IMG/VR virus record: IMGVR_UViG_3300021959_006010
Location: 1 to 64,000 of that record
DNA length: 64,000 bases
Strand: one strand, 5' to 3'
Positions 8,525-62,223 of this stretch are shown one piece after another. The notes under the pieces were generated by a model that did not search any database, had not been told where the DNA came from, and saw only the letters and a program-made list of their open reading frames with translations. The position numbers and the translations under genes are program-made. Position 1 is the stretch's first letter. Each line of letters begins with the position of its first letter.

Positions 8525-8528
8525 ATAC
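8521..8528 (+). promoter_or_regulatory. Putative T4-type late promoter (ATAAATAC)
   Basis: ATAAATAC lies just upstream of the 8539 ATG. The same octamer recurs at 13129 and on the minus strand at 59251-59258, and resembles the T4 late consensus TATAAATA. Confidence 0.55.
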
Positions 8529-8538
8529 ACTAGTAGAA

Positions 8539-11246: not shown

Positions 11247-11247
11247 A

Positions 11248-13125: not shown

Positions 13126-13128
13126 CAG

Positions 13129-13136
13129 ATAAATAC
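13129..13136 (+). promoter_or_regulatory. Putative T4-type late promoter (ATAAATAC)
   Basis: In the 40-bp gap before 13166, followed by an SD-like AGGGG. Confidence 0.55.
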
Positions 13137-13165
13137 ATTAAAGCATTTTAGGGGAATACTACGAG

Positions 13166-14653: not shown

Positions 14654-14664
14654 ATATATAAATA
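14649..14664 (+). promoter_or_regulatory. Tandem T4 late promoter consensus (TATAAATA x2)
   Basis: Exact TATAAATATATAAATA overlapping the 14653 stop codon, upstream of 14702. Confidence 0.6.
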
Positions 14665-14701
14665 ACATAAAGTACGTATATTAAACATAGGATGATAAAA
14701 C

Positions 14702-17858: not shown

Positions 17859-18461
17859 ATGAGAGTAGAATTTCCACCTATAGTAAAAGTAGATACAAAT
17901 TATGCTGTAATTTTTAATCCAGATAATTTTTTAGTTACTGCTATTAAAAAGAACAGGGATATTCCTAAAGATGTTTCTTATCTAGAGACAACATTTGAAG
18001 ATGTTAGAGATATCATCGAAGGTAAAGAAACATTAAAGTCATGTAAAGTGGCATATGATATTAAAACAAAGCAATATCAATTAGTACGAAACAACATAGA
18101 ACAACCTGTATATACTGTTTCAGAACTAATTTATAAGATCCCAATTGAGGAAGAATCTGAGGCTGAAATACAAGTAATACAAGACATTGAAAATACTTGT
18201 TGGAAAATTTTTATGAGCGATGACCTTAGAACAAAGTTGACAAACGATGCAGTTAATGTTAATATAGATGTAAGTCTAAGTGTAACTGAAGAAAATAACC
18301 CTAATATTCTTTACCGAACATTAAAGTTTTCTTTGAAAGAGCTTATGCAGAAGTTTTACATTATTATAGACTTTAAACAAGAAAGAGAATTTAATGCAGA
18401 GCCGGTAAGTTTGTATACAATACAACGTTTTCAAACTTACTCTTACGAGGTTAAAAAATGA
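17859..18461 (+). CDS. Hypothetical protein
   Basis: 200-aa ORF abutting both neighbours. No recognisable motif. Confidence 0.7.
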   Translation: MRVEFPPIVKVDTNYAVIFNPDNFLVTAIKKNRDIPKDVSYLETTFEDVRDIIEGKETLKSCKVAYDIKTKQYQLVRNNIEQPVYTVSELIYKIPIEEESEAEIQVIQDIENTCWKIFMSDDLRTKLTNDAVNVNIDVSLSVTEENNPNILYRTLKFSLKELMQKFYIIIDFKQEREFNAEPVSLYTIQRFQTYSYEVKK

Positions 18462-19405
18462 GCGACAAATTTAAAATTTTAGATTATGATATCATTTATC
18501 TAAGTTACGACGAGCCAAACGCAGAAAAAAACTATGCAGATCTGTGTAGTAAAGTACCGTGGGCTAAACGTGTACACGGTGTAGAAGGATCAGATGCTGC
18601 ACACAAAGCATGTGCCGAATTATCAGAAACAGAACGATTTATTACGATCGACGGCGACAATATTGTAAACGCTAAGTTCTTGCATCAAGAATATGATCTT
18701 AACAATCACGAAGACGTACATTGGAATAGAGAAGTTGACTTTGATCAGTGCGTAGTAAGTTGGACTGCCCGTAATACTATTAACGGATTAATGTACGGCA
18801 ACGGTGGCATTAAATGTTGGCCTAAAGATAAAGTGCTTAACATGAAGACACACGAAAATGCTGATCCCGACAACGTACATGCACAAGTTGATTTTTGTTG
18901 GGATTTACAATACATACAAATGAATACTTGTTATAGTGAGATTATGAATAATTATACTCCGCATCAAGCTTGGCGTGCCGGATTCCGCGAAGGTGTTAAG
19001 ATGGCGCTAGATCGCGGCATTAAACCTAGCAAAGAAGAGTTTCTAGCAGGACATTGGAAAAACTTGCATAGACTATGGATCTGGCTAATGGTAGGTGCTG
19101 ATGTAGAAAACGGACGTTGGGCTATCTACGGTGCTCGTGAAGGCTTGTACAAAACAATGTGTACAGACTGGGACTTTGTAAATGTGCGTGACTTTGAATG
19201 GTTGAATACTTATTGGGATAGTAAAAACTTAGACGAAGTGGATATGGATAGCGAAACAGACGAACTTGGTGATAAACTTATACACGAGTTAGGTATTCCT
19301 ATTGCAGTAGATCCGTTAAATGCAGATCAGAGTGCATTCTTTAAAACAGTGTACCAAAATCCTAGCCGTAATCCTAAACAGCAATTTGTGGTTGCTCCTG
19401 AATGA
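18458..19405 (+). CDS. Glycosyltransferase-like protein (GT-A, DxD)
   Basis: YDIIYLSYDEPNA...VHGVEG..AAH...FITIDGD...YGNGGIK...AWRAGFRE. Homologous to the C-terminal domain of 40203..42173. Confidence 0.65.
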   Translation: MSDKFKILDYDIIYLSYDEPNAEKNYADLCSKVPWAKRVHGVEGSDAAHKACAELSETERFITIDGDNIVNAKFLHQEYDLNNHEDVHWNREVDFDQCVVSWTARNTINGLMYGNGGIKCWPKDKVLNMKTHENADPDNVHAQVDFCWDLQYIQMNTCYSEIMNNYTPHQAWRAGFREGVKMALDRGIKPSKEEFLAGHWKNLHRLWIWLMVGADVENGRWAIYGAREGLYKTMCTDWDFVNVRDFEWLNTYWDSKNLDEVDMDSETDELGDKLIHELGIPIAVDPLNADQSAFFKTVYQNPSRNPKQQFVVAPE

Positions 19406-38956: not shown

Positions 38957-40183
38957 ATGAATATTGGATTTATCGGAACAGGAAAATTAGGTATGCCTTG
39001 TGCAGAAGCAATTGCTGCCAAAGGACATACTGTTAAAGGATATGACATAGTAAAACAGTCTAGCAAGTCTGTAACTATGTTTCCTACAATAGAAGGATGT
39101 GTTACAAATTGTGACATTGTATTTGTTGCAGTTCCAACACCTCATGACCCTCTTTATGACGGCAATGCACCTACTTCTCACTTAGAGCCAAAAGACTTTA
39201 GTTATGATATTGTAAAAGAAGTATTAGCTGAAGCAAACAAGTATATGCACCCGCATCAATTATTAGTATTAATTAGTACAGTTCTTCCGGGCACAGTTCG
39301 TCGTGAGCTTGAGCCTCTTGTAACTGAATCTCGATTTGTTTACAATCCTTATCTTATTGCTATGGGAAGTGTAGCATGGGACATGGTCAATCCAGAAATG
39401 GTAATGATAGGTACAGAAGATGGCACAACAAATGGTGATGCAAAGGAACTGGTAGACTTTTATAAAACTATTATGGAGAATGATCCTAGATATGTGATAG
39501 GTACCTGGGACGAATGTGAATGTATCAAAGTATTTTATAACACCTTTATAAGTGCTAAAATAGGTCTTGTAAACATGATACAGGACGTTGCTATGCAACA
39601 GGGCAACATTAACGTAGACGTTGTTACAGACGCTCTAGCGCAGTCTACGATGCGTATTATGGGCCCACAGTATATGAAAGCAGGTATGGGTGACGGTGGC
39701 GCATGCCATCCTAGAGATAATATTGCATTACGTTACATGGCAAAAGAACTAGATTTAGGTTACGACTTGTTTGATAGTATTATGACTGCACGAGAAATAC
39801 AAGCTGAAAATCTTGCTAAGTTTTTAGTTGATATTGCAAACGAAAGAAACATGCCTATATACATACACGGCAAAGCATACAAGCCTAAAGTTCCGTACTG
39901 CGATGGTAGTTACAGTTTGTTAATAGGACATTACTGTGAACACTATGGATTTGCACCAACTTATATTGATCCGTATACAGGAAATGATTTCCAGCCAGAT
40001 ATTCCGGGTGTATTTTTAATGGCACATTCCGCAAGCACAACTTACGAATACACAGGAAACAAAAACAATGATGAAATATACTGTGTAATACCGATGGGAA
40101 GCGTAGTAGTTGATCCTTGGAGGAAGTTTATTTCAAATGCTAGTGAAGTAATTTATTACGGAAACACTAGACATATTAAATAA
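38957..40183 (+). CDS. UDP-glucose/GDP-mannose dehydrogenase family protein
   Basis: IGFIGTGKLG, FVAVPTP, STVLPGT, K.FYNTF and catalytic GGACHPRD. Confidence 0.9.
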   Translation: MNIGFIGTGKLGMPCAEAIAAKGHTVKGYDIVKQSSKSVTMFPTIEGCVTNCDIVFVAVPTPHDPLYDGNAPTSHLEPKDFSYDIVKEVLAEANKYMHPHQLLVLISTVLPGTVRRELEPLVTESRFVYNPYLIAMGSVAWDMVNPEMVMIGTEDGTTNGDAKELVDFYKTIMENDPRYVIGTWDECECIKVFYNTFISAKIGLVNMIQDVAMQQGNINVDVVTDALAQSTMRIMGPQYMKAGMGDGGACHPRDNIALRYMAKELDLGYDLFDSIMTAREIQAENLAKFLVDIANERNMPIYIHGKAYKPKVPYCDGSYSLLIGHYCEHYGFAPTYIDPYTGNDFQPDIPGVFLMAHSASTTYEYTGNKNNDEIYCVIPMGSVVVDPWRKFISNASEVIYYGNTRHIK

Positions 40184-40202: not shown

Positions 40203-42173
40203 ATGTATGATATCGTTTTTATAGGTCCTGCAGACTCACAATGGAAAAAAATTAAATCAAAGTATATTACTGCAAAACGTGCTGACACATTTTTGTCAGC
40301 TAAGAAAAAAGCATTTACTAAATTCTTTTGGGCAGTATCTTCTGATTTAGAAATAGCAGATAATTTTAATTTTGATTATGTTCCTGACGACTACAGTCAA
40401 GACGTAATACACGTTTTTAAAAATGACAAGCATTTTGATGGATTGTTTTTATCTCCTAGAGATGCTAATCCGTCCCAGCGAGAACTAGATCATAGATTCT
40501 TTGTACATAAAAAAGAAGTTGACATTCTAGCAAGTGTACCTTTACCTTTTGATTACTTCGAAATTGATTCTTACGAAGATTACGAGTACGCACTTGAAAA
40601 TAGCAAAACACAAATGTTTTGGATGGGCAGTAGAAATATAGAACCTAGCAAAGAGCTAATAGAAAATTTTTATATATCGCATCATGAAAAAATTGATCGT
40701 ACTCAAAATCATGCATTTAAGCATCTTACAAAAGACGGCGAAACGTATAACGGACTGTTTCTGTGTACAAAAGACCGAAAACTTTCAAAACGAGAAGTCG
40801 AATATCGATTTCCTGTCGATCGTAAAGAATGGGATATTGTTGGTAGCGGTCCTAAAAAATATGATGTTTTTACAATTGAAACTTATGACGATTATCTAGA
40901 AGCAGTTAACAATAGTACAACTGAAATGTTTTGGGCATTAAAGCCGTCAATTGATACATCTGAGTTTGACTTTGACATTTATTTTAGTTTTGAAAACACT
41001 TATGATAGAGAAACTAATCACGCCTTTTTGCACAACGAACAAGGCGAAATGTTAAGAAACAGTGTTTGGTTGTTATCAAAAACACAGCCGGTTTCTAAGA
41101 GAGAAATTGAATATAGATTTATTGTAAATGCAAAAGAATGGGACGTTGTTGCTAGTAAAACAAAATTGTACGATCAATTTATTGTAGACACCTATGATGA
41201 TTATTTGAAAGCATTAGAAAATACTTCAACAGAAATGTTCTGGGCAATTCCTAGTCGAATTAAAGATATAAATGAAGAAATTTTTAATAAAGTTTTTACA
41301 TACAAAAATATGCACGACAAAGAAAACGAATATGATCTTAATATAAATCATGTCTATAAAAACGGTGAATACTTTGATGGTATAATTTTATGTAGCACAA
41401 CTTGTAAGATTAGTAAAAGAGAGTTTTATTTCGGATTTATAGTGCAAAAGAAAGAAGTAGATATAGTTGCTAGTCAGCCAAAGCCCTATGACATAGTGTT
41501 TATTAGCTATAACGAACCAAACGCAAACGAAAACTTTGACCAGTTAATGGATCAATTCCCTGATAGAGTAATACATCGTGTACACGGTATAAAAGGAATA
41601 CACCAAGCTCACATTGAAGCAGCAAAAATTTGTGATACTGAAATGGTATGGATTGTTGACGGCGATGCAAAAATAGTCGACGGATTTAATTTTGATTATC
41701 AGGTTCCTGCATGGGAGAGAACTACAGTACACGTTTGGCGAAGTCAGAATCCTATTAATAAATTAGTATACGGCTATGGCGGCATTAAACTATTTCCTAC
41801 ACAACTAACAATAGACATGAACGTAAATAAACCCGACATGACTACAAGTATTAGCGAAAAGTTTAAAGCAGTTAAAGATGTTAGTAACATTACAGCATTT
41901 AACACAGATCCGTTTAACACTTGGAAAAGTGCATTTAGAGAATGTTGTAAGTTAAGTTCTAAGATTATTGATCGTCAAAAAGACGACGAAACAAACGAGC
42001 GTTTAAACATATGGTGTACAGCAGGAGAAGATGAGCTTTACGGTAAGTATTCTATAGAAGGAGCAAAGGCTGGTGCAGCATATGGTGCAAGAAACAAAGA
42101 CGATGTTAAAGCCTTAAAAATGATTAACGACTTTGACTGGTTAAAGGAGCAGTTTGATGCTACAGACATTTGA
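40203..42173 (+). CDS. Glycosyltransferase-like protein with four N-terminal degenerate repeats
   Basis: Four ~107-aa repeats (TEMFWA...SKRE...F....KE.DIVAS), then a GT-A domain from 41487 (YDIVFISYNEPNA...WIVDGD...YGYGGIK...WKSAFRE). Confidence 0.7.
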   Translation: MYDIVFIGPADSQWKKIKSKYITAKRADTFLSAKKKAFTKFFWAVSSDLEIADNFNFDYVPDDYSQDVIHVFKNDKHFDGLFLSPRDANPSQRELDHRFFVHKKEVDILASVPLPFDYFEIDSYEDYEYALENSKTQMFWMGSRNIEPSKELIENFYISHHEKIDRTQNHAFKHLTKDGETYNGLFLCTKDRKLSKREVEYRFPVDRKEWDIVGSGPKKYDVFTIETYDDYLEAVNNSTTEMFWALKPSIDTSEFDFDIYFSFENTYDRETNHAFLHNEQGEMLRNSVWLLSKTQPVSKREIEYRFIVNAKEWDVVASKTKLYDQFIVDTYDDYLKALENTSTEMFWAIPSRIKDINEEIFNKVFTYKNMHDKENEYDLNINHVYKNGEYFDGIILCSTTCKISKREFYFGFIVQKKEVDIVASQPKPYDIVFISYNEPNANENFDQLMDQFPDRVIHRVHGIKGIHQAHIEAAKICDTEMVWIVDGDAKIVDGFNFDYQVPAWERTTVHVWRSQNPINKLVYGYGGIKLFPTQLTIDMNVNKPDMTTSISEKFKAVKDVSNITAFNTDPFNTWKSAFRECCKLSSKIIDRQKDDETNERLNIWCTAGEDELYGKYSIEGAKAGAAYGARNKDDVKALKMINDFDWLKEQFDATDI

Positions 42174-43125
42174 GTTGCTTGATAGATTTGAACTACTTTA
42201 TTCTGATAATTCTAAGTTAGCAGATCTAAGACGTACATTTATTGATATGGATCTGAGTAGTTTATTTAGATTAACTGATACCGACGACGAACTACGTAAA
42301 GCAATATTGGAAGAAAACTTACATAGTATTTTTAGAGTTATTGAAGAATACGACACAGAAGATCTTCGTAAAGCAGTCATTGAAAAAAATATGCACAGCA
42401 TATTTAGATTAATCAATGACGAAGATTTGCGAAAACTTGTGCTAGAAGATAATACATGGAAATTATGGCCAGTGCTGAATAGGTATGTTGATACACAATT
42501 TGTTGCAGCATTTAAAAGTTTCTTTGTTAATGACACTGAAATATGGGATGATTGCTTCAGTAGAGGCCAACTTAAAAGCAAGTTGTGGTTAGTTGAAGAA
42601 CTTGAAAAACAAAAGGTAGAATTAGGTACAGTATATTTGTGTGCTGGCTGGTATGCTACATTGGCTACTATGTTGTTTGAAAGCGATATTGCTGTAGATA
42701 AAATCCGTAGTTTTGATATTGACGAAAGTTGTATCGAAATTGCTAAAACCTTCAATAAACCTTGGGTAATGAAAAATTGGCAGTTTCAAGCAAGTGTTGA
42801 AGACATTTGCAATATCAATTATACAAATCATACATATACAGTGACTCGCAGTAACGGCTCTACCGCAGAACTTAGCGATAGTCCTGATACTATTATTAAT
42901 ACGAGTTGCGAACATATTGAAAATTTTGCAGATTGGTATGCTAAAATACCAGACGGTAAATTAGTAATTTTGCAAAGTAATAATTTTTTCGATGTAGACG
43001 AGCATGTAAATTGTTCTAGAGATGCAGAAGAATTTAGCATCTCAGCACCTATGAGCAATTGTCTTTATCTAGGTGAGTTAGTTTTAGAAAAGTATTCGAG
43101 GTTTATGAAAATTGGATATAAATGA
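42157..43125 (+). CDS. Class I SAM-dependent methyltransferase-like protein with N-terminal helical repeats
   Basis: YLCAGWY (motif I-like), SFDID and IINTSCEH. SD AAGGAG before the ATG at 42157. Confidence 0.6.
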   Translation: MLQTFELLDRFELLYSDNSKLADLRRTFIDMDLSSLFRLTDTDDELRKAILEENLHSIFRVIEEYDTEDLRKAVIEKNMHSIFRLINDEDLRKLVLEDNTWKLWPVLNRYVDTQFVAAFKSFFVNDTEIWDDCFSRGQLKSKLWLVEELEKQKVELGTVYLCAGWYATLATMLFESDIAVDKIRSFDIDESCIEIAKTFNKPWVMKNWQFQASVEDICNINYTNHTYTVTRSNGSTAELSDSPDTIINTSCEHIENFADWYAKIPDGKLVILQSNNFFDVDEHVNCSRDAEEFSISAPMSNCLYLGELVLEKYSRFMKIGYK

Positions 43126-54107: not shown

Positions 54108-55172
54108 ATGCCAGCTACTCAACAAGAACTGGAGCAATTGAAACAAGATAAAGAATTTATTGTTTCTACAGTAGCAGAATGGGTTAAAGATGTATACCCA
54201 AATAGAACAAACGAACCAGAAAAGTGTGTGCGAGATTTAGGATACATATATGATGCATTTGTTAATACTGTTGAATATATAGATATAAATTATGCACACG
54301 ATATAGCTGCTAAGTTTTGGCATAAGGGTGTAATGCAGTTGGTAGAACCAGAAGTAGAAGTACATACATACGCTCATACTTCTGAACTTATAAAATTGAG
54401 ACATCCTACTTTAGAAAGATTTGCTATATCCTTCTTTAGAGAATTAACAAATGGGTTAAGTAATAAACCTAAATTTAAAGTAGGGAACGAAAGTGATCCT
54501 GAACTTACTAATAAAATACATAACTTAGCTAAAAACAGACATAACTGGAAACCGTTAACCGGAGACAAACCGACACCGGAGCATTTAGAGTTAATATTAG
54601 AAGCAGCAGCAGGTATGACACCAGCTTTGTCAAATGAATATAATTATCGAGTAGACGAAGTTCCTGATTATTTAAAAGAAGAATTGTTTACAGATCTTAT
54701 ACAATGGTCAGATGCAGCCGAAGAGTCTGGTAATACTTTATATGCAAGAGACCAAAACGATCAATTAAAAGCACCTACCTTGTTGTGTTGGTGTTTACGT
54801 TATAATCCAGAAAATGACAGTCACTATCAGTTTTGTGGAGATATGACAGATAGAGATCCAAATTTAATTAATATTGGACTAAGCGTATGGCACACTTGTT
54901 TAACTGCTGAAAGCTTAGGATATAAAACGTCCTTTTGTCAAGTTACAGGATGGAAACGAGACACTGCTAAAGAAATATTAGGATTAACTACTGACGAAGT
55001 TCAATCAGAACACCTTACTAAACGCAATGGACAGTGTGATTTTATGCCTATGATATTTTTAGCTATTGGTACTGAAGGACGAACTAATACCAACACTCGA
55101 GCTTTTAAGTCAGAAGATATTATTAACAAGATGCAATTTAGAGAAGAGAGACTCGTTTCAAATAATGACTGA
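54108..55172 (+). CDS. Fusion of a phycobiliprotein/globin-like domain and a nitroreductase-fold domain
   Basis: N-terminal VYP...EKCVRDLGY...AISFFRELTNGLS. C-terminal NRHNWKP....LELILEAA..TPA..N...APTLL...IG....CLTAESLGY.T...FLAIG. Confidence 0.6.
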   Translation: MPATQQELEQLKQDKEFIVSTVAEWVKDVYPNRTNEPEKCVRDLGYIYDAFVNTVEYIDINYAHDIAAKFWHKGVMQLVEPEVEVHTYAHTSELIKLRHPTLERFAISFFRELTNGLSNKPKFKVGNESDPELTNKIHNLAKNRHNWKPLTGDKPTPEHLELILEAAAGMTPALSNEYNYRVDEVPDYLKEELFTDLIQWSDAAEESGNTLYARDQNDQLKAPTLLCWCLRYNPENDSHYQFCGDMTDRDPNLINIGLSVWHTCLTAESLGYKTSFCQVTGWKRDTAKEILGLTTDEVQSEHLTKRNGQCDFMPMIFLAIGTEGRTNTNTRAFKSEDIINKMQFREERLVSNND

Positions 55173-56286
55173 AGATTTAAAATGGAGCAATTACGATTTT
55201 ACTAAAATACCTTTTGACGATCTTGTCAGTGTCGGCCAACGTACTCTTTTGTATCGTGATATATTTACAGTATCATGGTTACTTGGCCGTTTCTGTAACT
55301 ATCGTTGCTCCTACTGCTGGCCCTACGCCAGAAGCGATCGTAAAGACCACCGTCCTACCGAGCTCTGCTTGCTTACAGTGGATGAAATTAAACGTCAAGC
55401 CCGAGACAACGGCTTCAATTCTTTCCACTTCTCCTTGTCAGGAGGAGAGCCTACTTTCCATCCTGGATACCTCGATATACTAAAGCATTTGGCAAATGAT
55501 GTGCCAAACACAAACTATACAAGCATACACATGACTAGCAATTGCAGTCGTCCTATGAGCTGGTTCGAACAGTATGTTGAACTTGCAAAACCATTCCACA
55601 GAGCAAGTATTACAGCAAGTCTGCACACAGAACATTTAAACACAAAGGAGAAGATGCAGGACTTTGCAGACAAGTTGATCCTGTGTCAAGAACATGATGT
55701 ACAAGTTACAATCAATATGGTTATGGTGCCAGACTGGTTTGAACGTGATTGGGAAAATGCTTTGTTCTTCCATGAGCAAGGTATCAATGTCACCCTTAAG
55801 CCGCAGTCCGACCCTACGGCATCGAGAATCGTTGAAGGATACCGAGAAGAAGACCTAAAGCGTTTGTGGAATGGAATGCCACAACGTGCATACACCGAAA
55901 GCAAACGTAAATGGCAAGGACGTCCTAAACCAACGTATCAAATACCTACAGGAGTAAACGGTAAGTTAGACGCTAGTGTTCCGTGGCATATGCAAGTAGA
56001 ATTTGAAGATAAAGATGGTAAGAAATGGTTTATGGATCAAGCAGAAAGATTTAATGCTTTTAATTTTAATAAATTTAAAGGCTGGAATTGTAACGCTGGC
56101 TACCAAGGAATTATCATACGTGAACCCGACGGCAGTATTAAACGTAGTTACAGTTGTCATGATGTGCCTCTTGGTAATATTGAAACAGGTTTTAAATTAT
56201 TTGACAAACCTATGCCTTGTATAACAGACAGTTGTGTAAGCTCAGCAGATAGCAAAATTCCGAAACGAAAAGAAAGGTTCAATTAA
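55165..56286 (+). CDS. Radical SAM protein with C-terminal twitch-like Cys cluster
   Basis: CNYRCSYC and SGGEP. C-terminal CNAG...PDG.....SC...C...C. The ATG at 55165 is preferred. Confidence 0.9.
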   Translation: MTEDLKWSNYDFTKIPFDDLVSVGQRTLLYRDIFTVSWLLGRFCNYRCSYCWPYARSDRKDHRPTELCLLTVDEIKRQARDNGFNSFHFSLSGGEPTFHPGYLDILKHLANDVPNTNYTSIHMTSNCSRPMSWFEQYVELAKPFHRASITASLHTEHLNTKEKMQDFADKLILCQEHDVQVTINMVMVPDWFERDWENALFFHEQGINVTLKPQSDPTASRIVEGYREEDLKRLWNGMPQRAYTESKRKWQGRPKPTYQIPTGVNGKLDASVPWHMQVEFEDKDGKKWFMDQAERFNAFNFNKFKGWNCNAGYQGIIIREPDGSIKRSYSCHDVPLGNIETGFKLFDKPMPCITDSCVSSADSKIPKRKERFN

Positions 56287-56287
56287 A

Positions 56288-57046
56288 ATGGATTTAAAAA
56301 AGTTTGACAAAAACGGCAATCCTCTTAATCTTACAGAACGAGATTTACGACATTTAAGAGGAAAATATTACGAGTATTGGTTAAAAGATCCTGCTCTTAC
56401 AATGCCGACAGAAGAGCAAGTATTGTGCGAACTTCAATTAACAGCACTAGGAAATTTTGAAGAATTGAATTTTGATTTAGATAGCAATTTATTCCACAAA
56501 GAAATAGAAGCTTACAACGATAAATGGGTGCCATATCTTAGAAGAGAAGGAGTGTCTAATGACAGAGAAGGACTTTTGCTAGTAGGTCTAGAAGGAGATA
56601 CTCCTAGTGATAGTTTGAGTCGCCCTGAAGCAATTAAGCGAGCAGGAAGAAATTTAAACGAAACTGATTTTACGTATCCTACACAAGCATATAAAGATTT
56701 AACTAGCCTGCATCCTATACTAGATTACTGGACAGATCTTGGTAGAACTATGTTGATTCGAACACACGAAGGCGGATGGTTCCCTCCGCATAGAGATCAG
56801 CCGCATTTAAAAAGAGATACTTTTCGGGTCATTATGTTTATTGGTAGAGAAGTGGGTATGAGTTCGTACGAGTGGTTTTTAGGCGACGAACGTCAAGTAA
56901 TTTGTTCAAACAGTGCATATTATGTAGATACTAGAAAAGTACACAGAACACACAGCTGGGAAAGAAATAGCACACATTTGATTTTAAACATTCCTAAAAC
57001 ATGGGAAAATGTAATGAAGTTGATGAGTGTATTACGTCACTTGTAA
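56288..57046 (+). CDS. Fe(II)/2OG oxygenase, aspartyl/asparaginyl beta-hydroxylase-like
   Basis: GGWFPPHRD, YVDTRKVH and HLILN. Confidence 0.6.
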   Translation: MDLKKFDKNGNPLNLTERDLRHLRGKYYEYWLKDPALTMPTEEQVLCELQLTALGNFEELNFDLDSNLFHKEIEAYNDKWVPYLRREGVSNDREGLLLVGLEGDTPSDSLSRPEAIKRAGRNLNETDFTYPTQAYKDLTSLHPILDYWTDLGRTMLIRTHEGGWFPPHRDQPHLKRDTFRVIMFIGREVGMSSYEWFLGDERQVICSNSAYYVDTRKVHRTHSWERNSTHLILNIPKTWENVMKLMSVLRHL

Positions 57047-57732
57047 TGAGAACCAAAGAACAAATAGATAGAATACAATCAACACACGGAAATCCTATTT
57101 CCATAAAAAATATTGTTGATGTAGAACCTCTTAAAAATTATTATAAAGATAATAGTAATAAAATAATACAGAAAAATACAGGTCCTAAAATTTTAGAAGT
57201 TGACCCGAACGAGTTGCTATTCTCTAATTTAATTTATAATATTAAAAGAAGTGTTGGTGAGTTTGAGGTAAGATACATACATTATTTTGATGTTACACAT
57301 CCTCATATTATACACAACGACGATACTTTTGAATACCCTAACTGCTATAAAGCATTTACTATTCCTTTAGAAATTTATGGCGACAGTGATGATATAAAGT
57401 TAGTAGTTTATGATCAATATTATTATGGCGGACCTGCCAAGTTTTTCAACGGAGAAACTAAAAAAGACGGCCAAGTTTATTACAATACACCAATAACTGA
57501 TTATAATGATGTATATGGTGTAAACGAAAATGGAATACCTGAAAACATTAAAAATAATTACTTAACACATTTAAAAGATAATTGGCTTAAAGGGTTAAGT
57601 ATTAATGCCATGCTTGATTGGAAAATAGGCGATGTTTTGTGTTTTGATAGTTTAGCTTTACATTCGTCATCTGACTTTATAAATAAAAATGTATCGAGAA
57701 AAATAGGAATATCTATTTTTACCACATTATAG
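57046..57732 (+). CDS. Fe(II)/2OG oxygenase-like protein
   Basis: IHND, TIPL and WKIGDVLCFDSLALHSS. TAATG-coupled start at 57046. Confidence 0.55.
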   Translation: MRTKEQIDRIQSTHGNPISIKNIVDVEPLKNYYKDNSNKIIQKNTGPKILEVDPNELLFSNLIYNIKRSVGEFEVRYIHYFDVTHPHIIHNDDTFEYPNCYKAFTIPLEIYGDSDDIKLVVYDQYYYGGPAKFFNGETKKDGQVYYNTPITDYNDVYGVNENGIPENIKNNYLTHLKDNWLKGLSINAMLDWKIGDVLCFDSLALHSSSDFINKNVSRKIGISIFTTL

Positions 57733-57740
57733 GATATCTT

Positions 57741-58397
57741 ATGGATTGGCAAGAATTAATTAATAAAAGACATACAACATTTGCATGGGACGATTCAAAA
57801 GTTCCGAGTAGAAGTGTAATAGAAGAAGTATTTGAAGAAGCATATTTACATGTTCCTACAAAAAACTTAATGTATCCATACGAAGCAATAGCATATAGAA
57901 ACGATGATGACGAAATTCGAAAAGAGATAATGACAATATGTCATCGTAACAAAGATATGCCTGTTGAAACAGATCGAGGAAATCCACAAGTGTTAGCACC
58001 TTGGTTAATCGGATTTACTGGAAGATATACACAGGATTTAGAAAAAAGATACGAAAGAAGTTCTTATCGAGAAAGACCTATACAAAGAGACAGTGAGCAA
58101 ATGGAAATTGGAATGTGTGCTATGTTCTTTGCATATGCCTTTGCTAGTAGAGGCATACAAACAGGCTATTGCCAGAATATATTGAATAATCCTCTTAGAG
58201 GAGGAGAAATATTTGGTTTAGAACCTGGTAGGAAATTAAGATTTATAATGGGTGTAGGATACGGAAAAGATAGTGCAACAAGGCACGAATACTACGATCC
58301 GAGAGTAAATCAAAATAAGAGTATTCCTTATACTCCAGATCATGTTGGTGTAATTTATCCGAGACCGGATATAGAAAAGGTATTTAGAGTGCTGTAA
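57741..58397 (+). CDS. Nitroreductase-fold flavoprotein
   Basis: INKRHTTFAW, VPTKN, QVLAPWL, EIG......A...GIQTGYC and MGVGY. Confidence 0.65.
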   Translation: MDWQELINKRHTTFAWDDSKVPSRSVIEEVFEEAYLHVPTKNLMYPYEAIAYRNDDDEIRKEIMTICHRNKDMPVETDRGNPQVLAPWLIGFTGRYTQDLEKRYERSSYRERPIQRDSEQMEIGMCAMFFAYAFASRGIQTGYCQNILNNPLRGGEIFGLEPGRKLRFIMGVGYGKDSATRHEYYDPRVNQNKSIPYTPDHVGVIYPRPDIEKVFRVL

Positions 58398-58407
58398 GCA
58401 CTCTAAA
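58383..58407. terminator. Perfect inverted repeat at the convergent gene junction
   Basis: TTTAGAGTGCT-GTA-AGCACTCTAAA (11-bp arms) spans the 58397 stop and abuts the 58408 stop. Confidence 0.6.
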
Positions 58408-59223
58408 CTAAGCAGCTACTAGTTCTTCTTCTTTGTCCCAGTATTGTTCGTCTGCTTCTAAAATTCCACCTTGACCTGTTACAACTACTACTAGATGTAC
58501 ACGGTCGATGTCGCTGTCATTCTTAACCCAGTGCTCGTACGCTTGATTTAAGAACCACACACTGCCGTCAGCTGGCATATGCTTCTCTACAGTACGTTTT
58601 TTTCCTTTGGTGCCTACAACAACGTCTTCGTGCGTAATTAACGGTATATGTATACGAACTGCTTTATCTGTGTTTATGTCAAGATGTGGTTTAATTTCTT
58701 CTCCTGCTTTAAGCACAGCATATCTTGTACGTGCAACATGGCCTACGTGTTCTTCAATCATGTCAAGAACTTCTGCTACATAACCTTTACAAAACTCGTT
58801 ACGTTTATCATACAATTTTTCGTCTGCAATAGGGGTGTAATCAGGATGGCTTGGGTCTGAAATCTTTTCCATACGTCTTGCAAATTTGCGAGGATCCATT
58901 CCTGTTTCCTCTAGTTTTTTAGCAAGATCTTTATTGTGATCATCTGGATTACCATTAAATTCGGTTAAACACAACATTTTATATGCTTCGCCGCCGTCCG
59001 CAACAAGTTTTCCTTCTCTTTCAGCTTTTTCTTCGTCTGTAAGAAAATATTCAAGAAGCACTCTTCGAACTACAAGTCCATCTTCAGTATTATTGCCGTA
59101 ACTTAATCCGTTATACATATCCCAATTGTCGTAACCCAATTCAAAAAATTCTTTACGCAAGCGATCGATATCTACCTTAAAATTAAGTTTTGCCATTAAT
59201 GGTAAGTGTTGTCTTTTAAGCAT
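58408..59223 (-). CDS. Aspartyl/asparaginyl beta-hydroxylase-like Fe(II)/2OG oxygenase
   Basis: IKPHLD, RIHIPLIT, DGSVWFLN..EHWV.N and RVHLV. Confidence 0.75.
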   Translation of the reverse strand: MLKRQHLPLMAKLNFKVDIDRLRKEFFELGYDNWDMYNGLSYGNNTEDGLVVRRVLLEYFLTDEEKAEREGKLVADGGEAYKMLCLTEFNGNPDDHNKDLAKKLEETGMDPRKFARRMEKISDPSHPDYTPIADEKLYDKRNEFCKGYVAEVLDMIEEHVGHVARTRYAVLKAGEEIKPHLDINTDKAVRIHIPLITHEDVVVGTKGKKRTVEKHMPADGSVWFLNQAYEHWVKNDSDIDRVHLVVVVTGQGGILEADEQYWDKEEELVAA

Positions 59224-59250
59224 GTTTAGTAACCTCTACTCTTTCTATGT

Positions 59251-59258
59251 GTATTTAT
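59251..59258 (-). promoter_or_regulatory. Putative T4-type late promoter (ATAAATAC)
   Basis: The minus strand reads AGATAAATACAC...GAGG...ATG upstream of 59223. Confidence 0.5.
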
Positions 59259-59265
59259 CTATTGG

Positions 59266-59820
59266 TTAATATGTGTGTGTTATTTCTTTAAATTTATGTT
59301 TTGATTCTATCATAAACATAATTGTTTTAGCACATTCTTTCGGATCCATTAATTGTGCTAGTACACGTTGCTGATCAGCAACTGGCCATTCGTCTATTCC
59401 TTGTCGAGCTAGTAAAGTATCAACATACCCTGGATTATACATCATGCTCTTAAATAAAGTTTCGTTATCGCTTATCCAAAAGCTATATGTTTCGAGAGAT
59501 TTTTTAGCAACATTATAATTTAATCTCGATAGAGGTCGACCTTTAAGGACGTCTTTATGCCATGTCCCAACATTAATAACTTTTTTTGAAGTATTAGTCC
59601 AGTTTTTGTGTGCGTACTTTAAGAGTTCTAACTGTCCAGTATAATGATACGCATTGTTAACGAGTACATCGTATTCTAAAACTTGCGAATAAACATCAGG
59701 ATTACTAATATCAAATCCAGTACTTTTACTTCCGCCAGTAACAGTATATCCTTTTTCTTTAGCAAGTTCGTAAATTGCTTTACCTATACCACTTGTGTGT
59801 CCGGTTATAAAAATACGCAT
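59266..59820 (-). CDS. Short-chain dehydrogenase/reductase
   Basis: ITGHTSGIG, LVNNA, YNVAK and PGYVDT. Confidence 0.85.
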   Translation of the reverse strand: MRIFITGHTSGIGKAIYELAKEKGYTVTGGSKSTGFDISNPDVYSQVLEYDVLVNNAYHYTGQLELLKYAHKNWTNTSKKVINVGTWHKDVLKGRPLSRLNYNVAKKSLETYSFWISDNETLFKSMMYNPGYVDTLLARQGIDEWPVADQQRVLAQLMDPKECAKTIMFMIESKHKFKEITHTY

Positions 59821-59830
59821 TAATATACCA

Positions 59831-60619
59831 TTATTTTACAAATGCATGTTTTATGATCCATCCAGTAGGATCAAGTTCGTATGGTCGTACCTTGTAATAG
59901 TACGCACTAGGATTTCCATGATGATTGTTATGTAATGCTTCTCCAAGTAATCCAAAACCAGTTAATGCATTAATAAGAAGACCATTACGTGTGTCATCGT
60001 TAGAATCATAGTTTCGGTATCCTATATTAGGAAATACTCCGTGACCGAATATATTATTAACTCCGAAGTTAAAGCGAATTAAAAATACCGGAATTAAGTA
60101 CGCATTTAATACAAATGTCCATCCGCCTATAATATACCATGCTACACAATATCCTAAAATAACAAACCAATACCAGTCATGCATAAATTTAACTGCTGGA
60201 TTTCTTAATTCTTTAACTACTGCTCGTGGTCGAATACGCTGAAAATGTTCTTTGTCTTGTAAACAAAAGAAACTTCTAAATATTCCGATAGCACTTGGTG
60301 CGATAGGATCGTGTTCGGTGTCGGCGTATGCATGATGTATTCTGTGTATATCTACCCACCATGCAATGCTACCTTGTGTACTTAATGTAGCAGTAAATGC
60401 TAAAAACCAATGACGCAATTTTCCTGTATTGAAGCTTTTATGACCGAAGTATCGATGCATTCCTGCACTACTGCCCATCATTGATACTAAAAATGTCCCA
60501 ATAATAAATGGCCATAATTCAAAGTACTGTGGCTGTAGAATTAAAAAAGGAGCACTTAACCAGCATAAACGCTGTACTCCGGCTAACAACCAAGTTCGAT
60601 GGAATGCTTTAATTGTCAT
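59831..60619 (-). CDS. Membrane-bound fatty-acid (delta-9-like) desaturase family protein
   Basis: Three His boxes (HRYFGH, HRIHH, HNNHH), hydrophobic segments and DPTGW. Confidence 0.85.
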   Translation of the reverse strand: MTIKAFHRTWLLAGVQRLCWLSAPFLILQPQYFELWPFIIGTFLVSMMGSSAGMHRYFGHKSFNTGKLRHWFLAFTATLSTQGSIAWWVDIHRIHHAYADTEHDPIAPSAIGIFRSFFCLQDKEHFQRIRPRAVVKELRNPAVKFMHDWYWFVILGYCVAWYIIGGWTFVLNAYLIPVFLIRFNFGVNNIFGHGVFPNIGYRNYDSNDDTRNGLLINALTGFGLLGEALHNNHHGNPSAYYYKVRPYELDPTGWIIKHAFVK

Positions 60620-61649
60620 TAAAATTCTCTTTCATAAAATTATTTAGCTCGTTGAGTTTGTTAGAATAAATGTCTGCATGTTCTTTTTGGAAATAAGGAT
60701 TATAGTTAGATACTTGAATGTTTTCATAGCCATGTTGTACACGGTATGCCAAACGTCCTTCTACATCACCTAAACGTCGATGGTTAGTAATACTATTATC
60801 AAAGAACAACCAATCGTTATTGTTTTCATACCAATGATCCCACATATAACGTTCAGTCATAAGTTCTTTGTTTAGACGATCAAATAGTGCATTGCTTTCT
60901 TCTTGACTCATGCCTACAATGCCGTCTACTGTATTAATACTATAGTGTAGACCTTTAATGCCGCCTGGGCTTTGTATAACCATAGGCAAATAACTTTCTA
61001 GCTCAGGATTCATATTGATACGCATCATTTCGTCTTGATCGCCTAGGTCTTTAACGTGTAGCATACCTGGCTTATGCCGATGGATGACAATCATATCATC
61101 TAGTTCGCTGCGGAAACTTTCGGAAATATCTTCATAGTAAGTAGCAGTTTGTAAAAATCCTGTACTAGAACCAATCATATTTTCTTGTCCTAATAGTGCA
61201 ACACCGGGTGCAAAAATATGATTGCCCGCCTCGTTACTGTGCCACTTTAGCTCGCCGTCTGGAAAAATACCTGTATAATCTCCACGCTTATCACGAATGT
61301 TTGTTACACGCTGCGTCCCCGAAGGACCTTTAGTTTTAAACCTCTGTTTAATTACATTAATATGTTCGGGTTTAATACTAGGATCGTTTTTAATTGCTTT
61401 ACTAATTACTTCTTTAGCCGGAACTCCAGGATAGTGACTGCAAATATTAAGCATACCACTATAGCGTAAAGGTCCCCATTTTGTGATATACTTAGTTACA
61501 TCTTTTGGAGAAACGTTACAATTACGAATAATTGTAACTAAGTTATCCATATGTATCTTACCAATTTCTAACCATTGGTCGTCGGTCATATTCTCAAAGT
61601 CTACATCGTCGATATAGACAGCATAATTATGTGGGTAAGATATTTTCAT
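60609..61649 (-). CDS. TauD/TfdA-family dioxygenase
   Basis: LKWHSNE, STGF...YEDISE, PMVIQSP and WLFFDN..TNHRR...R..YR. Confidence 0.75.
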   Translation of the reverse strand: MKISYPHNYAVYIDDVDFENMTDDQWLEIGKIHMDNLVTIIRNCNVSPKDVTKYITKWGPLRYSGMLNICSHYPGVPAKEVISKAIKNDPSIKPEHINVIKQRFKTKGPSGTQRVTNIRDKRGDYTGIFPDGELKWHSNEAGNHIFAPGVALLGQENMIGSSTGFLQTATYYEDISESFRSELDDMIVIHRHKPGMLHVKDLGDQDEMMRINMNPELESYLPMVIQSPGGIKGLHYSINTVDGIVGMSQEESNALFDRLNKELMTERYMWDHWYENNNDWLFFDNSITNHRRLGDVEGRLAYRVQHGYENIQVSNYNPYFQKEHADIYSNKLNELNNFMKENFNDN

Positions 61650-62223
61650 AGTTAAAGTCCCTTCGGTTATTGTATATTATGTACTGCCAGCATTCCGGAT
61701 CTGGTGGGTTAGGTGCTACTAAGCACGGTTCGTCTGATACTTTCCATTCTTCGTTAGTATAATTAGTTATCATCTCGGCTAATTGTCGAGTCCTTCTTCC
61801 GGATGTTTTCGTTTCTTCTCTACCGATAAAGAAATCGGTATATCCTAAGTTATTACAAAAATCTATCTGTTGTGTAATATGATCTATTGTATCTAAACGC
61901 ATGCCATCAGTGCCCTTACCAAAATTTTTCATTTTATACTTAGGTACAATGCAGTATCGAGTACACAAACGTATAATACCGTTATACATAGGTCGTGTCC
62001 AAGCTAAAGATGCAAGCACTGGTTCTTCGTCAACTGTTGTCACGGTATAACAAAGTGTATTATTTTTTAAGTTTTCGTCTATAACATAGTTAGGAGATCT
62101 TAACTGATCAGACTTTGCTACTTCTTTAAAAATGTAAATAATTTCTTCAGAAGGAACTTCTGTTGTAAAGGTATTAGAATTACCATCTAGCTTTTCGTAT
62201 AGTTTTAAAGGTTTGAATCTCAT
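61627..62223 (-). CDS. Hypothetical protein, possibly GNAT-fold
   Basis: IRLCTRYCIVPKY and LGY..FFIGRE loosely resemble GNAT motifs A/B. Confidence 0.4.
   Translation of the reverse strand: MRFKPLKLYEKLDGNSNTFTTEVPSEEIIYIFKEVAKSDQLRSPNYVIDENLKNNTLCYTVTTVDEEPVLASLAWTRPMYNGIIRLCTRYCIVPKYKMKNFGKGTDGMRLDTIDHITQQIDFCNNLGYTDFFIGREETKTSGRRTRQLAEMITNYTNEEWKVSDEPCLVAPNPPDPECWQYIIYNNRRDFNYENILPT

What the first reader, a model, noticed from the sequence alone, without database searches (positions are those of the whole stretch)
40203..42173. Glycosyltransferase preceded by four apparently inactive copies of its own N-terminal subdomain
Seen: aa 1-428 comprise four ~107-aa repeats. The repeats mirror the start of the final GT domain (MYDIVFIG, YDVFTI and YDQFIV versus YDIVFIS; TKFFWAVSSD, TQMFWMGSRN, TEMFWALKPS and TEMFWAIPSR versus TEMVWIVDGD), but none keeps the DxD. 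The stand-alone paralogue at 18458 has no repeats. Inference: pseudo-GT repeats act as glycan-binding modules, a chain-length ruler or a scaffold, and repeat number may vary between phages.
Basis: partly seen in the sequence, partly recalled or inferred. Interest (0 to 1): 0.6.

Follow-up and report, generated by a model that had tools for sequence, protein, structure and literature searches.

The report
Phage glycosyltransferase with dead-domain arm
A gene of an uncultured marine giant phage encodes a sugar-transferring enzyme whose one working domain is preceded by four shrunken, inactivated copies of itself; relatives carry from none to fifteen such copies, which suggests an adjustable non-catalytic arm whose purpose is still unknown.

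Summary

The units are homologous to this domain's own core (hhalign E 4e-21 for the first unit, 2.5e-10 for internal units), not to the paralogue at 18458. They copy the whole β-sheet core in about 105 aa and lack the helical bundle. Acidic residues at both DxD positions are almost always gone (5/575 internal, 2/164 first units).

The family is large, unnamed and almost wholly viral: more than 5,000 protein clusters and at least 595 IMG/VR contigs, with no Pfam, PHROG or NCBIfam model. Relatives carry 0 to 15 units before one catalytic domain. First, second and last units are positionally conserved, and middle units come and go. Among pairs with ≥90% identical catalytic domains, 43% differ in unit number.

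The gene lies in a tail-fibre-adjacent island with sugar-nucleotide enzymes and 15 radical SAM genes.

My best reading is a catalytically dead, length-adjustable arm that positions or docks the enzyme on a long acceptor. The anatomy is well supported; the function is inferred only. It is a new variant of a known kind.

The parts
40203..42173 (+). Whole gene: 656-aa soluble protein made of four degenerate GT-A-core units and one complete GT-A catalytic domain
   Evidence: ORF and translation. Full-length AlphaFold2 model: mean pLDDT 90.5, pTM 0.65. No hydrophobic segment, pI 5.2. Independent-run contigs match exactly.
40203..40544 (+). Unit 1, the 'cap' type (aa 1-114). It is the most complete copy of the catalytic core and keeps the first helix-strand pair. 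The DxD position reads S-S-D here and W-D-D in most relatives.
   Evidence: hhalign of the cap profile against the catalytic domain: probability 99.4%, E 3.8e-21. Against type A E 7e-29, against type B E 3e-6. Secondary-structure order matches the catalytic core. Motif tally.
40545..40856 (+). Unit 2, internal type (aa 115-218). The 'second' position is conserved across relatives.
   Evidence: BLASTP E 3e-23 to 4e-27 against units 3 and 4. Genome scan E 9.8e-40. Second-position units have another second-position unit as nearest neighbour in 99 of 120 cases.
40857..41165 (+). Unit 3, internal type (aa 219-321)
   Evidence: The ESM Atlas model of this stretch matches Glycos_transf_2 clusters at TM 0.58-0.64 over 82-86 residues.
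41166..41483 (+). Unit 4, internal type in the 'last' position (aa 322-427), next to the catalytic domain
   Evidence: Last-position units have another last-position unit as nearest neighbour in 107 of 120 cases.
41484..41903 (+). Catalytic GT-A core (aa 428-567), beginning with the SYNEPNA-type strand-loop
41658..41666 (+). D486-G-D488, the only DxD motif in the protein
   Evidence: Invariant in the 66-sequence alignment. DGD or DAD in 212 of 212 catalytic domains examined.
41904..42170 (+). C-terminal helical bundle (aa 568-656), absent from every unit. It carries invariant R, E and W residues.
   Evidence: Secondary structure. Invariant residues R152, E153, R173 and W177 in domain numbering.
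18458..19405 (+). Type-B paralogue (315 aa). It has no units and keeps its own DGD. In many related phages it lies directly upstream of the type-A gene or is fused to it.
   Evidence: E 4.7e-21, 33% identity. hhalign type A against type B E 7.5e-43. Adjacency and B-A fusions. Consensus.
42154..43125 (+). Conserved downstream partner (323 aa) that overlaps the gene's 3' end by 20 nt. It has short, roughly 22-aa N-terminal repeats and a probable class I methyltransferase-like domain.
   Evidence: 51% identical, E 8e-124, to the gene directly downstream in L025. A homologue is present in 48 of 80 viral loci and lies directly downstream of 35 type-A genes. The methyltransferase likeness is a lead only.
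38957..40183 (+). UDP-glucose/GDP-mannose dehydrogenase-family gene immediately upstream
   Evidence: Pfam PF03721 and PF00984; PHROG 9148 at E 1.5e-94.

Best explanation
The gene encodes a soluble enzyme of a large, unnamed, almost exclusively viral family of GT-A-fold glycosyltransferases. Only the last 229 residues form a complete enzyme: a GT-A core with an invariant DGD, followed by a helical bundle.

The first 427 residues are four miniaturised, catalytically dead copies of that enzyme's own β-sheet core. There is one 'cap' unit and three internal units. They are joined by conserved junctions, with only about three residues between the last strand of one unit and the first strand of the next. 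These steps are shown or strongly supported.

Inferred: the units form a non-catalytic arm whose length is set by unit number. The conserved end units make the fixed contacts: the cap with some docking site, and the last unit with the catalytic domain. The middle units are gained and lost quickly. This changes the reach or spacing at which the catalytic domain acts on a long acceptor. That acceptor could be a glycan polymer or the phage's own fibre, made or modified by the surrounding island (type-B paralogue, methyltransferase-like partner, sugar-nucleotide enzymes, radical SAM enzymes). The arm may also lie along that acceptor.

My odds are about 0.9 for the anatomy (dead self-copies plus one live GT-A domain) and about 0.4 for the spacer or positioning role.
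For: Homology and origin:
- The units are homologous to the catalytic core and derive from type A itself, not type B.
- Each unit repeats the secondary-structure order of the catalytic core. None has the helical bundle. Full-length pLDDT is 90.5 and pTM 0.65 for five domains.
- An Atlas model of unit 3 matches GT2 clusters at TM 0.58-0.64.

The catalytic domain:
- DxD is present in 212/212 catalytic domains, against 5/575 internal units and 2/164 caps.

The arm in relatives:
- Unit number runs from 0 to 15, always ahead of a single complete catalytic domain.
- Nearest neighbours keep their position: first to first 116/120, second to second 99/120, last to last 107/120. Middle units are the most alike within one protein, median 0.67.
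- 43% of pairs with ≥90% identical catalytic domains differ in unit number.
- The units are under constraint: 49-58% identity to orthologues, against 67-71% for the catalytic domain.
- The junction consensus S-x-P-K-x-Y-D is conserved in the 43-sequence alignment.

Context:
- Tail-fibre genes, UDP-glucose dehydrogenase, an epimerase and 15 radical SAM genes surround the gene.
- The same association recurs in 80 viral loci.
- A repeat-less homologue in a Bacteriovoracaceae chromosome sits among three GT2 genes.
Against: - No activity, donor or acceptor is known for any member.
- I could not obtain coordinates or inter-domain error estimates. Rigidity is therefore inferred only from the short conserved junctions and the pTM.
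- There is no signal peptide, membrane segment or recognisable docking motif in the cap, so what the arm would be anchored to is unknown.
- Unit number did not correlate with the repeat count of the downstream partner.
- The giant neighbouring fibre protein shows no periodicity that a ruler might read.
- Conserved Tyr, Trp, His and Glu residues at former pocket positions, and units in distant lineages that still read D-x-D, fit a ligand-binding role at least as well.
Confidence: 0.45

Rival explanations
1. The units are multivalent ligand-binding modules, working like tandem carbohydrate-binding modules. Each dead core would keep a remnant pocket that binds the acceptor polymer or a nucleotide-sugar. 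More units would give more avidity or processivity on a repetitive substrate. This is not exclusive of the arm model.
For: The units derive from a nucleotide-sugar-binding fold. Internal units have nearly invariant Tyr10, Tyr13, Trp26, His55 and Glu83. The two Tyr replace two conserved His of the catalytic domain. Caps mostly keep W-D-D. In distant lineages many N-terminal units still read D-x-D. Copy-number variation is typical of binding-repeat arrays (my own knowledge).
Against: The S-Y-x-E-P-N-A loop, the DxD and the Y-G-x-G-G-x-K strand are gone from internal units, so little of the pocket is left. Strong positional identity and very short conserved junctions are unlike typical binding arrays, which are homogenised and joined by flexible linkers. 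No known carbohydrate-binding family is matched.
Confidence: 0.3
2. The units are an assembly or chaperone scaffold. They would mediate self-association or hold partner enzymes (the type-B paralogue or the methyltransferase-like neighbour), in the way inactive glycosyltransferase homologues serve active ones.
For: Type B lies directly upstream of type A in many loci and is fused to it in four (L062, L065, L075, L076). A complex prediction of type B with the type-A catalytic domain gave weak support: score 0.33, best of 3 controls 0.02. The mark was reached by 58 of 80 solved complexes and 2 of 110 mismatched pairs, but at 0.60 or under by only 7 of those 80 and by both mismatches that passed. 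The runs agree in at least 90% of contacts, and the partner's pLDDT is at least 86. The downstream partner is translationally coupled by a 20-nt overlap.
Against: The partner genes accompany type-A genes with any unit number, including none, so any contact probably involves the catalytic domain and not the arm. A scaffold for fixed partners would not be expected to vary from 0 to 15 units between close relatives. The complex score is weak and concerns the catalytic domain only.
Confidence: 0.1
3. The C-terminal domain is not a glycosyltransferase. It could be a nucleotidyltransferase of the same fold, or the whole protein could be a structural, receptor-binding virion component that only looks like an enzyme.
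Against: A DxD directly after a β-strand is invariant in 212/212 domains. The start of the domain reads like the GT2 strand-Y-N-E motif and not like the glycine-rich loop of cytidylyltransferases (sequence, plus my own knowledge of those motifs). Most fold matches are GT-A glycosyltransferases. A bacterial homologue sits in a GT2 gene cluster. The neighbours are enzymes, and repeat-less 227-aa forms are common.
Confidence: 0.07
4. The units still catalyse a reaction of their own, or the array is functionless drift or an assembly artefact.
For: A few units in distant lineages keep D-x-D. The island is hypervariable (PMC7029224).
Against: The units lack the helical half, the DxD and nearly all invariant polar residues. 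Orthologous units are 49-58% identical with conserved positional identity, which indicates purifying selection. Independent-run contigs span the junctions exactly.
Confidence: 0.05

Closest known systems
GT2-type GT-A glycosyltransferases that act on polymers, with added non-catalytic domains (TarS, TarP, RmlT; also PcManGT, WrtF, SpsA)
   Same: Same fold, with a DxD after a β-strand. These are the top structural matches. TarS and RmlT also combine one GT-A domain with non-catalytic domains that organise the enzyme on a long polymer (my own knowledge).
   Different: No Pfam GT2 model is reached (17.6 against 27 bits). The GT-A core is minimal and is followed by a family-specific helical bundle. 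The extra domains are N-terminal, are derived from the catalytic core itself, and number 0 to 15.
Multi-GT-A enzymes and complexes, some with inactive domains (E. coli K4 chondroitin polymerase, human CHSY3-CHPF, EXT1-EXT2)
   Same: Several GT-A-type domains occur in one chain or complex. K4CP and CHSY3-CHPF appear among the structural matches. In relatives, type B and type A are adjacent or fused. A UDP-glucose dehydrogenase-family gene lies next door.
   Different: Those have two full-size domains, usually both active or with one inactive partner. Here up to 15 truncated dead cores precede a single active domain, and copy number varies between close relatives.
Cosmc (C1GALT1C1), an inactive GT-A homologue that chaperones the active T-synthase (my own knowledge)
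   Same: It is a catalytically dead derivative of a glycosyltransferase fold, kept for a non-catalytic job that serves the active enzyme.
   Different: Cosmc is a separate single-copy protein. Here the dead copies are in the same chain, tandem, miniaturised and variable in number.
Variable-length rod proteins built of tandem domains ('periscope' surface proteins) and coiled-coil rulers of O-antigen enzymes (WbdD, WbbB) (my own knowledge)
   Same: Length is set by a modular non-catalytic segment. Repeat copy number differs between close relatives, and the ends are conserved while the middle varies.
   Different: There is no secretion signal or surface anchor. The secondary-structure pattern gives no sign of a coiled coil, because the spacer is made of globular pseudo-enzyme domains. 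Rod geometry and any ruler function are untested.

Membership tests
GT-A fold nucleotide-diphospho-sugar transferases | α/β/α GT-A fold of the catalytic domain | tested here: met
   [not shown]
GT-A fold nucleotide-diphospho-sugar transferases | DxD metal and nucleotide-sugar motif at the end of a core β-strand | tested here: met
   D486-G-D488 follows strand 481-486. It is invariant in A2 and present in 212/212 catalytic domains.
GT-A fold nucleotide-diphospho-sugar transferases | Transfer of a sugar from a nucleotide-sugar donor | not testable with these tools
   [not shown]
Pfam/CAZy GT2 sequence family | Reaches the curated threshold of a GT2-type HMM (PF00535, PF13641 and relatives) | tested here: not met
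   The best hit is PF13641 at 17.6 bits against a cut-off of 27, E 0.004, covering aa 426-504 only. There are no NCBIfam or PHROG hits and no PDB sequence hit even with a profile.
Units as GT-A-core derivatives (pseudo-enzyme domains) | Statistically supported homology to the catalytic core, with the same order of secondary-structure elements | tested here: met
Matching strand and helix order. Atlas structural match of unit 3 to GT2 clusters at TM 0.58-0.64. A direct superposition of my models was not possible.
Units as GT-A-core derivatives (pseudo-enzyme domains) | Loss of catalytic residues | tested here: met
   Acidic residues at both DxD positions in 5/575 internal units and 2/164 caps, against 212/212 catalytic domains. 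The S-Y-x-E-P-N-A loop, His43, the Y-G-x-G-G-x-K strand and the whole helical bundle are absent. Loss of activity itself was not assayed.
Variable-length rod or ruler proteins | Tandem same-fold domains whose copy number differs between close relatives | tested here: met
   0 to 15 units. 43% of pairs with ≥90% identical catalytic domains differ in unit number.
Variable-length rod or ruler proteins | Rigid, extended inter-domain geometry | tested here: inconclusive
   Conserved junctions with about three residues between the last strand of one unit and the first of the next, and pTM 0.65 for five domains, point that way. No coordinates or error maps were available.
Two-domain GT-A polymerases (K4CP type) | Two catalytically competent GT-A domains in one chain | tested here: not met
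   This protein has one DxD-bearing complete domain. B-A fusions with two complete domains exist in relatives (L062, L065, L075, L076).
Known carbohydrate-binding module families | Match to a described binding-module family, or demonstrated glycan binding | tested here: not met
   No Pfam family is matched over aa 1-427. Binding itself cannot be tested here.

The most novel reading that the evidence does not exclude
The arm is a genetically tunable molecular ruler. In this reading it is a rigid rod of pseudo-glycosyltransferase domains, and its unit number (0-15) sets the position, spacing or chain length of a glycan that the enzyme builds on the phage's fibres or on the host envelope, possibly as a two-enzyme polymerase with the type-B paralogue. 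Gain or loss of one roughly 105-aa unit would then change host recognition or superinfection exclusion.
Probability: 0.15. Interest if true: 0.85.

Novelty: new variant of a known kind. Interest (0 to 1): 0.62.

Why it matters
Glycosyltransferases are well known, and single inactive homologues that serve active ones are known too. I found no description of an enzyme that carries an array of up to fifteen shrunken dead copies of its own catalytic core, with copy number changing between near-identical relatives. Two literature searches and all family libraries came back empty.

The family has thousands of members in marine, estuarine and freshwater phage metagenomes. It sits in the hypervariable, tail-fibre-adjacent island thought to govern host recognition.

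If unit number tunes where or how far the enzyme acts, this would be a simple, evolvable length-coding device in a phage-host arms race. It would also be a clean natural system for studying how pseudo-enzyme domains are recruited as structural parts. Even without a known function, the result defines an unnamed family, its domain grammar (cap, second, middle units, last, catalytic domain) and its conserved partners.

Tried and rejected
- **Family libraries.** PHROGs and NCBIfam gave nothing meaningful, and Pfam only a sub-threshold hit.
- **PDB by sequence.** Only chance hits with the single sequence and none with the profile.
- **Cultured phages.** The nucleotide search found nothing. The protein search found only Ralstonia jumbo phage RsoM2USA gp348, a repeat-less hypothetical protein at 44% identity.
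- **Cap derived from a degenerated type-B paralogue after a B-A fusion.** Rejected. The cap matches type A at E 7e-29 and type B at E 3e-6. Internal units match type A at 1.4e-9 and type B at 0.18.
- **Unit number tracks the short repeats of the downstream partner.** No relation was seen.
- **The 2750-aa neighbouring protein is a periodic acceptor.** Only one weak internal duplication was found.
- **The source label 'CYTH domain-containing protein' on some homologues.** No precomputed Pfam hit supports it. The extra N-terminal roughly 150 aa in those proteins is another cap-like unit.
- **T4 Gp23 family search in the record.** Uninformative, because the controls did not ring either.
- **Reads.** No RNA run holds the gene, so expression is unknown. 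The short-sided joints seen at 90% likeness come from related phages in the same samples and were not taken as variants.
- **Literature.** Searches for a described equivalent found nothing relevant.
- **Not possible here.** I could not superpose models, because no coordinates are returned.
Full report
**What is there.** The window is the first 64 kb of a 275-kb IMG/VR virus record (CheckV completeness 77%, GC about 33%) found in marine and estuarine metagenomes. ORF 40203-42173 (+) encodes 656 aa. The protein divides into four tandem units (aa 1-114, 115-218, 219-321, 322-427) and a 229-aa C-terminal domain.

**Is the repeat more than chance?** Yes.
- BLASTP between units gives E 3e-23 to 4e-27 for units 2-4 (39-43% identity) and E 8e-11 to 4e-16 for unit 1 against them. 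Unit 1 against the C-terminal domain gives 5.5e-8.
- With profiles built from homologues, the first-unit ('cap') profile matches the C-terminal domain at probability 99.4%, E 3.8e-21, over cap 1-91 and domain 1-111. The internal-unit profile matches at 96.8%, E 2.5e-10.
- In the whole 275-kb record the unit profile hits only this gene.
- Contigs of an independent run (X3) match with no mismatch over 40553-40982, 41004-41915 and 41888-42416. They therefore span the unit 2/3, unit 3/4 and unit 4/catalytic-domain junctions, so the array is not an assembly artefact.

**What the C-terminal domain is.**
- Sequence libraries leave it open. There is one sub-threshold Pfam hit (Glyco_tranf_2_3, 17.6 bits against 27) and nothing in PHROGs, NCBIfam or PDB sequences.
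- An AlphaFold2 model from a 66-sequence alignment is confident (pLDDT 94.7, pTM 0.87).
- Foldseek against PDB returns GT-A glycosyltransferases at probability 1.0 and E about 3e-5: PcManGT, WrtF, RmlT, TarS, ArnC, GtrB, ppGalNAc-Ts, SunS and K4CP.
- Invariant residues include the S-Y-x-E-P-N-A start, His43, D59-G-D61 (aa 486-488), Y-G-x-G-G-x-K, D118, R152-E153, R173 and W177.
- I read it as a probable GT-A glycosyltransferase that belongs to no described sequence family.

**What the units are.** The full-length model (pLDDT 90.5, pTM 0.65) gives every unit the same order of elements as the catalytic core.
- The cap has strand, helix, strand, helix, strand (the former DxD strand), short strand, strand, strand, helix and a long strand.
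- Internal units have the same order without the first helix-strand pair.
- None has the helical bundle.

So the units copy the whole β-sheet core in about 105 aa, where the catalytic domain uses about 140. That is more than an 'N-terminal subdomain'. The ESM Atlas's own model of unit 3 matches Glycos_transf_2 clusters at TM 0.58-0.64 over 82-86 residues.

The units derive from this (type A) domain and not from the paralogue family (type B, window 18458). The cap matches type A at E 7e-29 and type B at 3e-6. Internal units match type A at 1.4e-9 and type B at 0.18.

Catalytic residues are lost. Both DxD positions are acidic in 212/212 catalytic domains, 5/575 internal units and 2/164 caps; caps mostly read W-D-D. 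Two conserved His of the catalytic helix are replaced by two nearly invariant Tyr in internal units.

**The family.**
- The word search found 1,381 clusters (90% identity) of 360-1148 aa. Their lengths are quantised near 645, 745, 855, 960, 1070 and 1145 aa, which corresponds to 4 to 9 units.
- With the catalytic domain alone it found 4,313 clusters of 126-400 aa, chiefly 227 aa (no unit) and about 344 aa (cap plus domain).
- The exhaustive profile search with the internal unit found only 154 clusters at 50% identity among 1.84 billion. These carry up to 15 units (P0241, 1735 aa: cap plus 14 internal units plus catalytic domain; also P0242 and P0243). With few exceptions (short fragments and the P0342 type noted below), each has one complete catalytic domain at the C-terminus.
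- At least 595 IMG/VR contigs encode a relative.
- Atlas clusters of the domain are 95-100% viral and unnamed.
- BFVD holds two uncharacterised 'uncultured Caudovirales' members.
- Among 185,579 prokaryote species genomes, only 19 loci matched. Most are metagenome bins. Some are apparently genuine Bdellovibrionia/Bacteriovoracaceae copies, and there is one Streptomyces copy.
- Among cultured phages only Ralstonia jumbo phage RsoM2USA has a member, and it is repeat-less.

**Grammar and dynamics of the array.**
- Nearest-neighbour analysis of 715 units shows positional orthology. First units pair with first units in 116/120 cases, second with second in 99/120, and last with last in 107/120.
- Middle units resemble each other within one protein (median best identity 0.67, against 0.39 for caps). 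Only 77 of 715 units have their closest relative in the same protein. The ends are therefore fixed and the middle expands and contracts.
- Unit number is labile. 43% of pairs with ≥90% identical catalytic domains differ in unit number, rising to 90% below 60% identity. The sample comes from two length-banded searches, so these percentages are rough.
- The units are conserved but less so than the enzyme: 49-58% against 67-71% identity to four-unit orthologues.
- The junctions are conserved, with consensus S-x-P-K-x-Y-D.
- The protein is acidic (pI 5.2) and has no hydrophobic segment.
- In distant lineages (for example P0293, P0274, P0323) many N-terminal units still read D-x-D, so degeneration is graded across the family.

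**Context.**
- Upstream in the window lie tail-fibre-type genes: a 2750-aa ORF, a tail-collar domain and a Peptidase_G2 autoproteolytic domain.
- From about 16 to 58 kb follows one co-directional block. It contains the type-B paralogue, 15 radical SAM ORFs (two with B12-binding domains, several with an N-terminal SPASM domain), an NAD epimerase, a UDP-glucose/GDP-mannose dehydrogenase-family gene directly upstream of the gene, a GDSL-like protein and nitroreductase-like proteins.
- On the opposite strand lie an Asp/Asn β-hydroxylase, a fatty-acid desaturase and a TauD-type dioxygenase.
- In 80 viral loci fetched with the catalytic domain, within 8 kb, homologues of the window's radical SAM genes occur in about 46-63 loci. 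The downstream 323-aa gene occurs in 48 loci and lies directly downstream of 35 type-A genes, never of a type-B gene. Three unannotated upstream ORFs occur in 27-41 loci, and fibre genes in 10-22.
- Type B lies directly upstream of type A in many loci and is fused to it in four.
- A 374-kb contig carries a 977-aa member directly after a 3825-aa Peptidase_S74 fibre protein and an Anp1-like protein, beside T4-type neck and sheath genes.
- This matches the 'host recognition cluster' described for pelagimyophages and cyanomyophages. That hypervariable island holds tail fibres, glycosyltransferases, UDP-glucose dehydrogenase and radical SAM cassettes (PMC7029224). The paper does not describe this protein.
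- In a Bacteriovoracaceae chromosome a repeat-less member lies among three GT2 genes next to a second paralogue.

**How it most likely works.**
- Shown or strongly supported: there is one live GT-A domain, and four dead miniature copies of its own core. The copies are conserved, ordered and variable in number across phages.
- Inferred: the copies form a non-catalytic arm of adjustable length. The conserved cap and last unit make the fixed contacts, and the middle units set the reach. This positions the catalytic domain on a long acceptor made or modified by the island. The arm may also bind that acceptor.
- I give about 0.4 to the spacer or positioning role and 0.3 to a multivalent binding array; the two are compatible. 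I give 0.1 to an assembly or chaperone scaffold. Small odds go to 'not a glycosyltransferase', 'still catalytic' and 'functionless'.
- A complex prediction of type B with the type-A catalytic domain gave weak support. The score was 0.33 against 0.02 for the best of three controls. The mark was reached by 58 of 80 solved complexes and 2 of 110 mismatched pairs, but at 0.60 or under by only 7 of those 80 and by both mismatches that passed. The runs agree in at least 90% of contacts and the partner's pLDDT is at least 86. Together with the fusions, this makes a two-enzyme unit plausible but says nothing about the arm.

**Comparison with what is known.**
- It works like a GT-A glycosyltransferase that carries accessory non-catalytic domains, as TarS and RmlT do. 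It recalls enzymes and complexes in which inactive glycosyltransferase homologues serve active ones (Cosmc, CHSY-CHPF, EXT1-EXT2). It also recalls variable-length rods and rulers (periscope proteins, WbdD, WbbB). These three comparisons rest on my own knowledge.
- It is not a member of Pfam/CAZy-type GT2 by sequence threshold. It is not a two-active-domain polymerase, has no coiled coil by secondary-structure pattern, and has no surface anchor.
- I rate it a new variant of a known kind: a known fold and a known principle (pseudo-enzyme domains) in an undescribed arrangement and family.

**Limits.** No member has been assayed. No coordinates or error maps were available, so rigidity and direct superposition remain untested. 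Expression is unknown because no RNA run holds the gene. Host identity is unknown.

Noticed in passing
window 19402-56286 (+), and 62908-63888 (-): There is an extraordinary density of radical SAM genes: 15 ORFs with Pfam Radical_SAM hits at E ≤ 0.001. They start at 19402, 23064, 27263, 29376, 31416, 33528, 34694, 37026, 44622, 45710, 47008, 48417, 49504, 52905 and 55066. A weaker sixteenth lies at 62908-63888 (-). Two carry B12-binding domains, and several have the SPASM domain N-terminal to the radical SAM core. Homologues accompany the glycosyltransferase family in most of 80 viral loci. What they modify (sugars or fibre proteins) is unknown.
   Followed up: partly
window 42154-43125 (+): The downstream gene overlaps the glycosyltransferase by 20 nt. 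It encodes about three short 22-24-aa helical repeats (D-L-R-K-A-V-x-E-x-N-x-H-S-I-F-R type) followed by a probable class I SAM methyltransferase-like domain (Atlas feature search only). It is 51% identical to the gene directly downstream in L025, where the short repeats are more numerous. It lies directly downstream of 35 type-A genes in the 80 viral loci. Its short-repeat number also varies (0-5) but does not track the glycosyltransferase's unit number.
   Followed up: partly
L062:6190-7794, L065:7065-8678, L075:2947-4563, L076:7071-8681: These are natural fusions of a complete type-B domain to a complete type-A catalytic domain (535-539 aa). In many other loci B lies directly upstream of A, often with overlapping stop and start codons. 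A complex prediction for the window's B and A domains gave weak support only (score 0.33, best control 0.02).
   Followed up: partly
proteins P0293, P0302, P0274, P0323, P0335: Distant lineages of the family (up to 2164 aa) have N-terminal units that still read D-x-D (for example DAD, DPD, DRD) while lacking the helical half. Loss of the motif is therefore graded across the family. These units are the best candidates for retained nucleotide or metal binding.
   Followed up: partly
protein P0342 (1002 aa): It shows seven partial matches to the unit profile at a strict 97-aa period and has no catalytic domain. It may be a different repeat protein that shares only a sub-motif.
   Followed up: no
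window 272-15775 (+): This is a tail-fibre-type module ahead of the enzyme block. It includes a 2750-aa ORF with no Pfam match and only one weak internal duplication, a tail-collar-domain protein (9153-11246) and a protein with a Peptidase_G2 intramolecular-chaperone domain (13166-14653).
   Followed up: partly
window 54108-62223: Further unusual enzymes flank the cluster: two nitroreductase-like proteins (54108, 57741), an Asp/Asn β-hydroxylase (58408-59223, -), a fatty-acid desaturase (59831-60619, -) and a TauD-type dioxygenase (60609-61649, -). The hydroxylase hints at protein rather than sugar substrates for part of the island.
   Followed up: no
L020:5992-7643 (Bacteriovoracaceae chromosome OZ242254.1): Two tandem repeat-less members of the family lie beside three GT2 genes in a bacterial chromosome. 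Similar copies occur in other Bdellovibrionia bins (44-47% identity), and a 30% identical copy occurs in Streptomyces sp. BBFR102. These are the only likely cellular members among 185,579 species genomes.
   Followed up: partly
[not shown]
   Followed up: no
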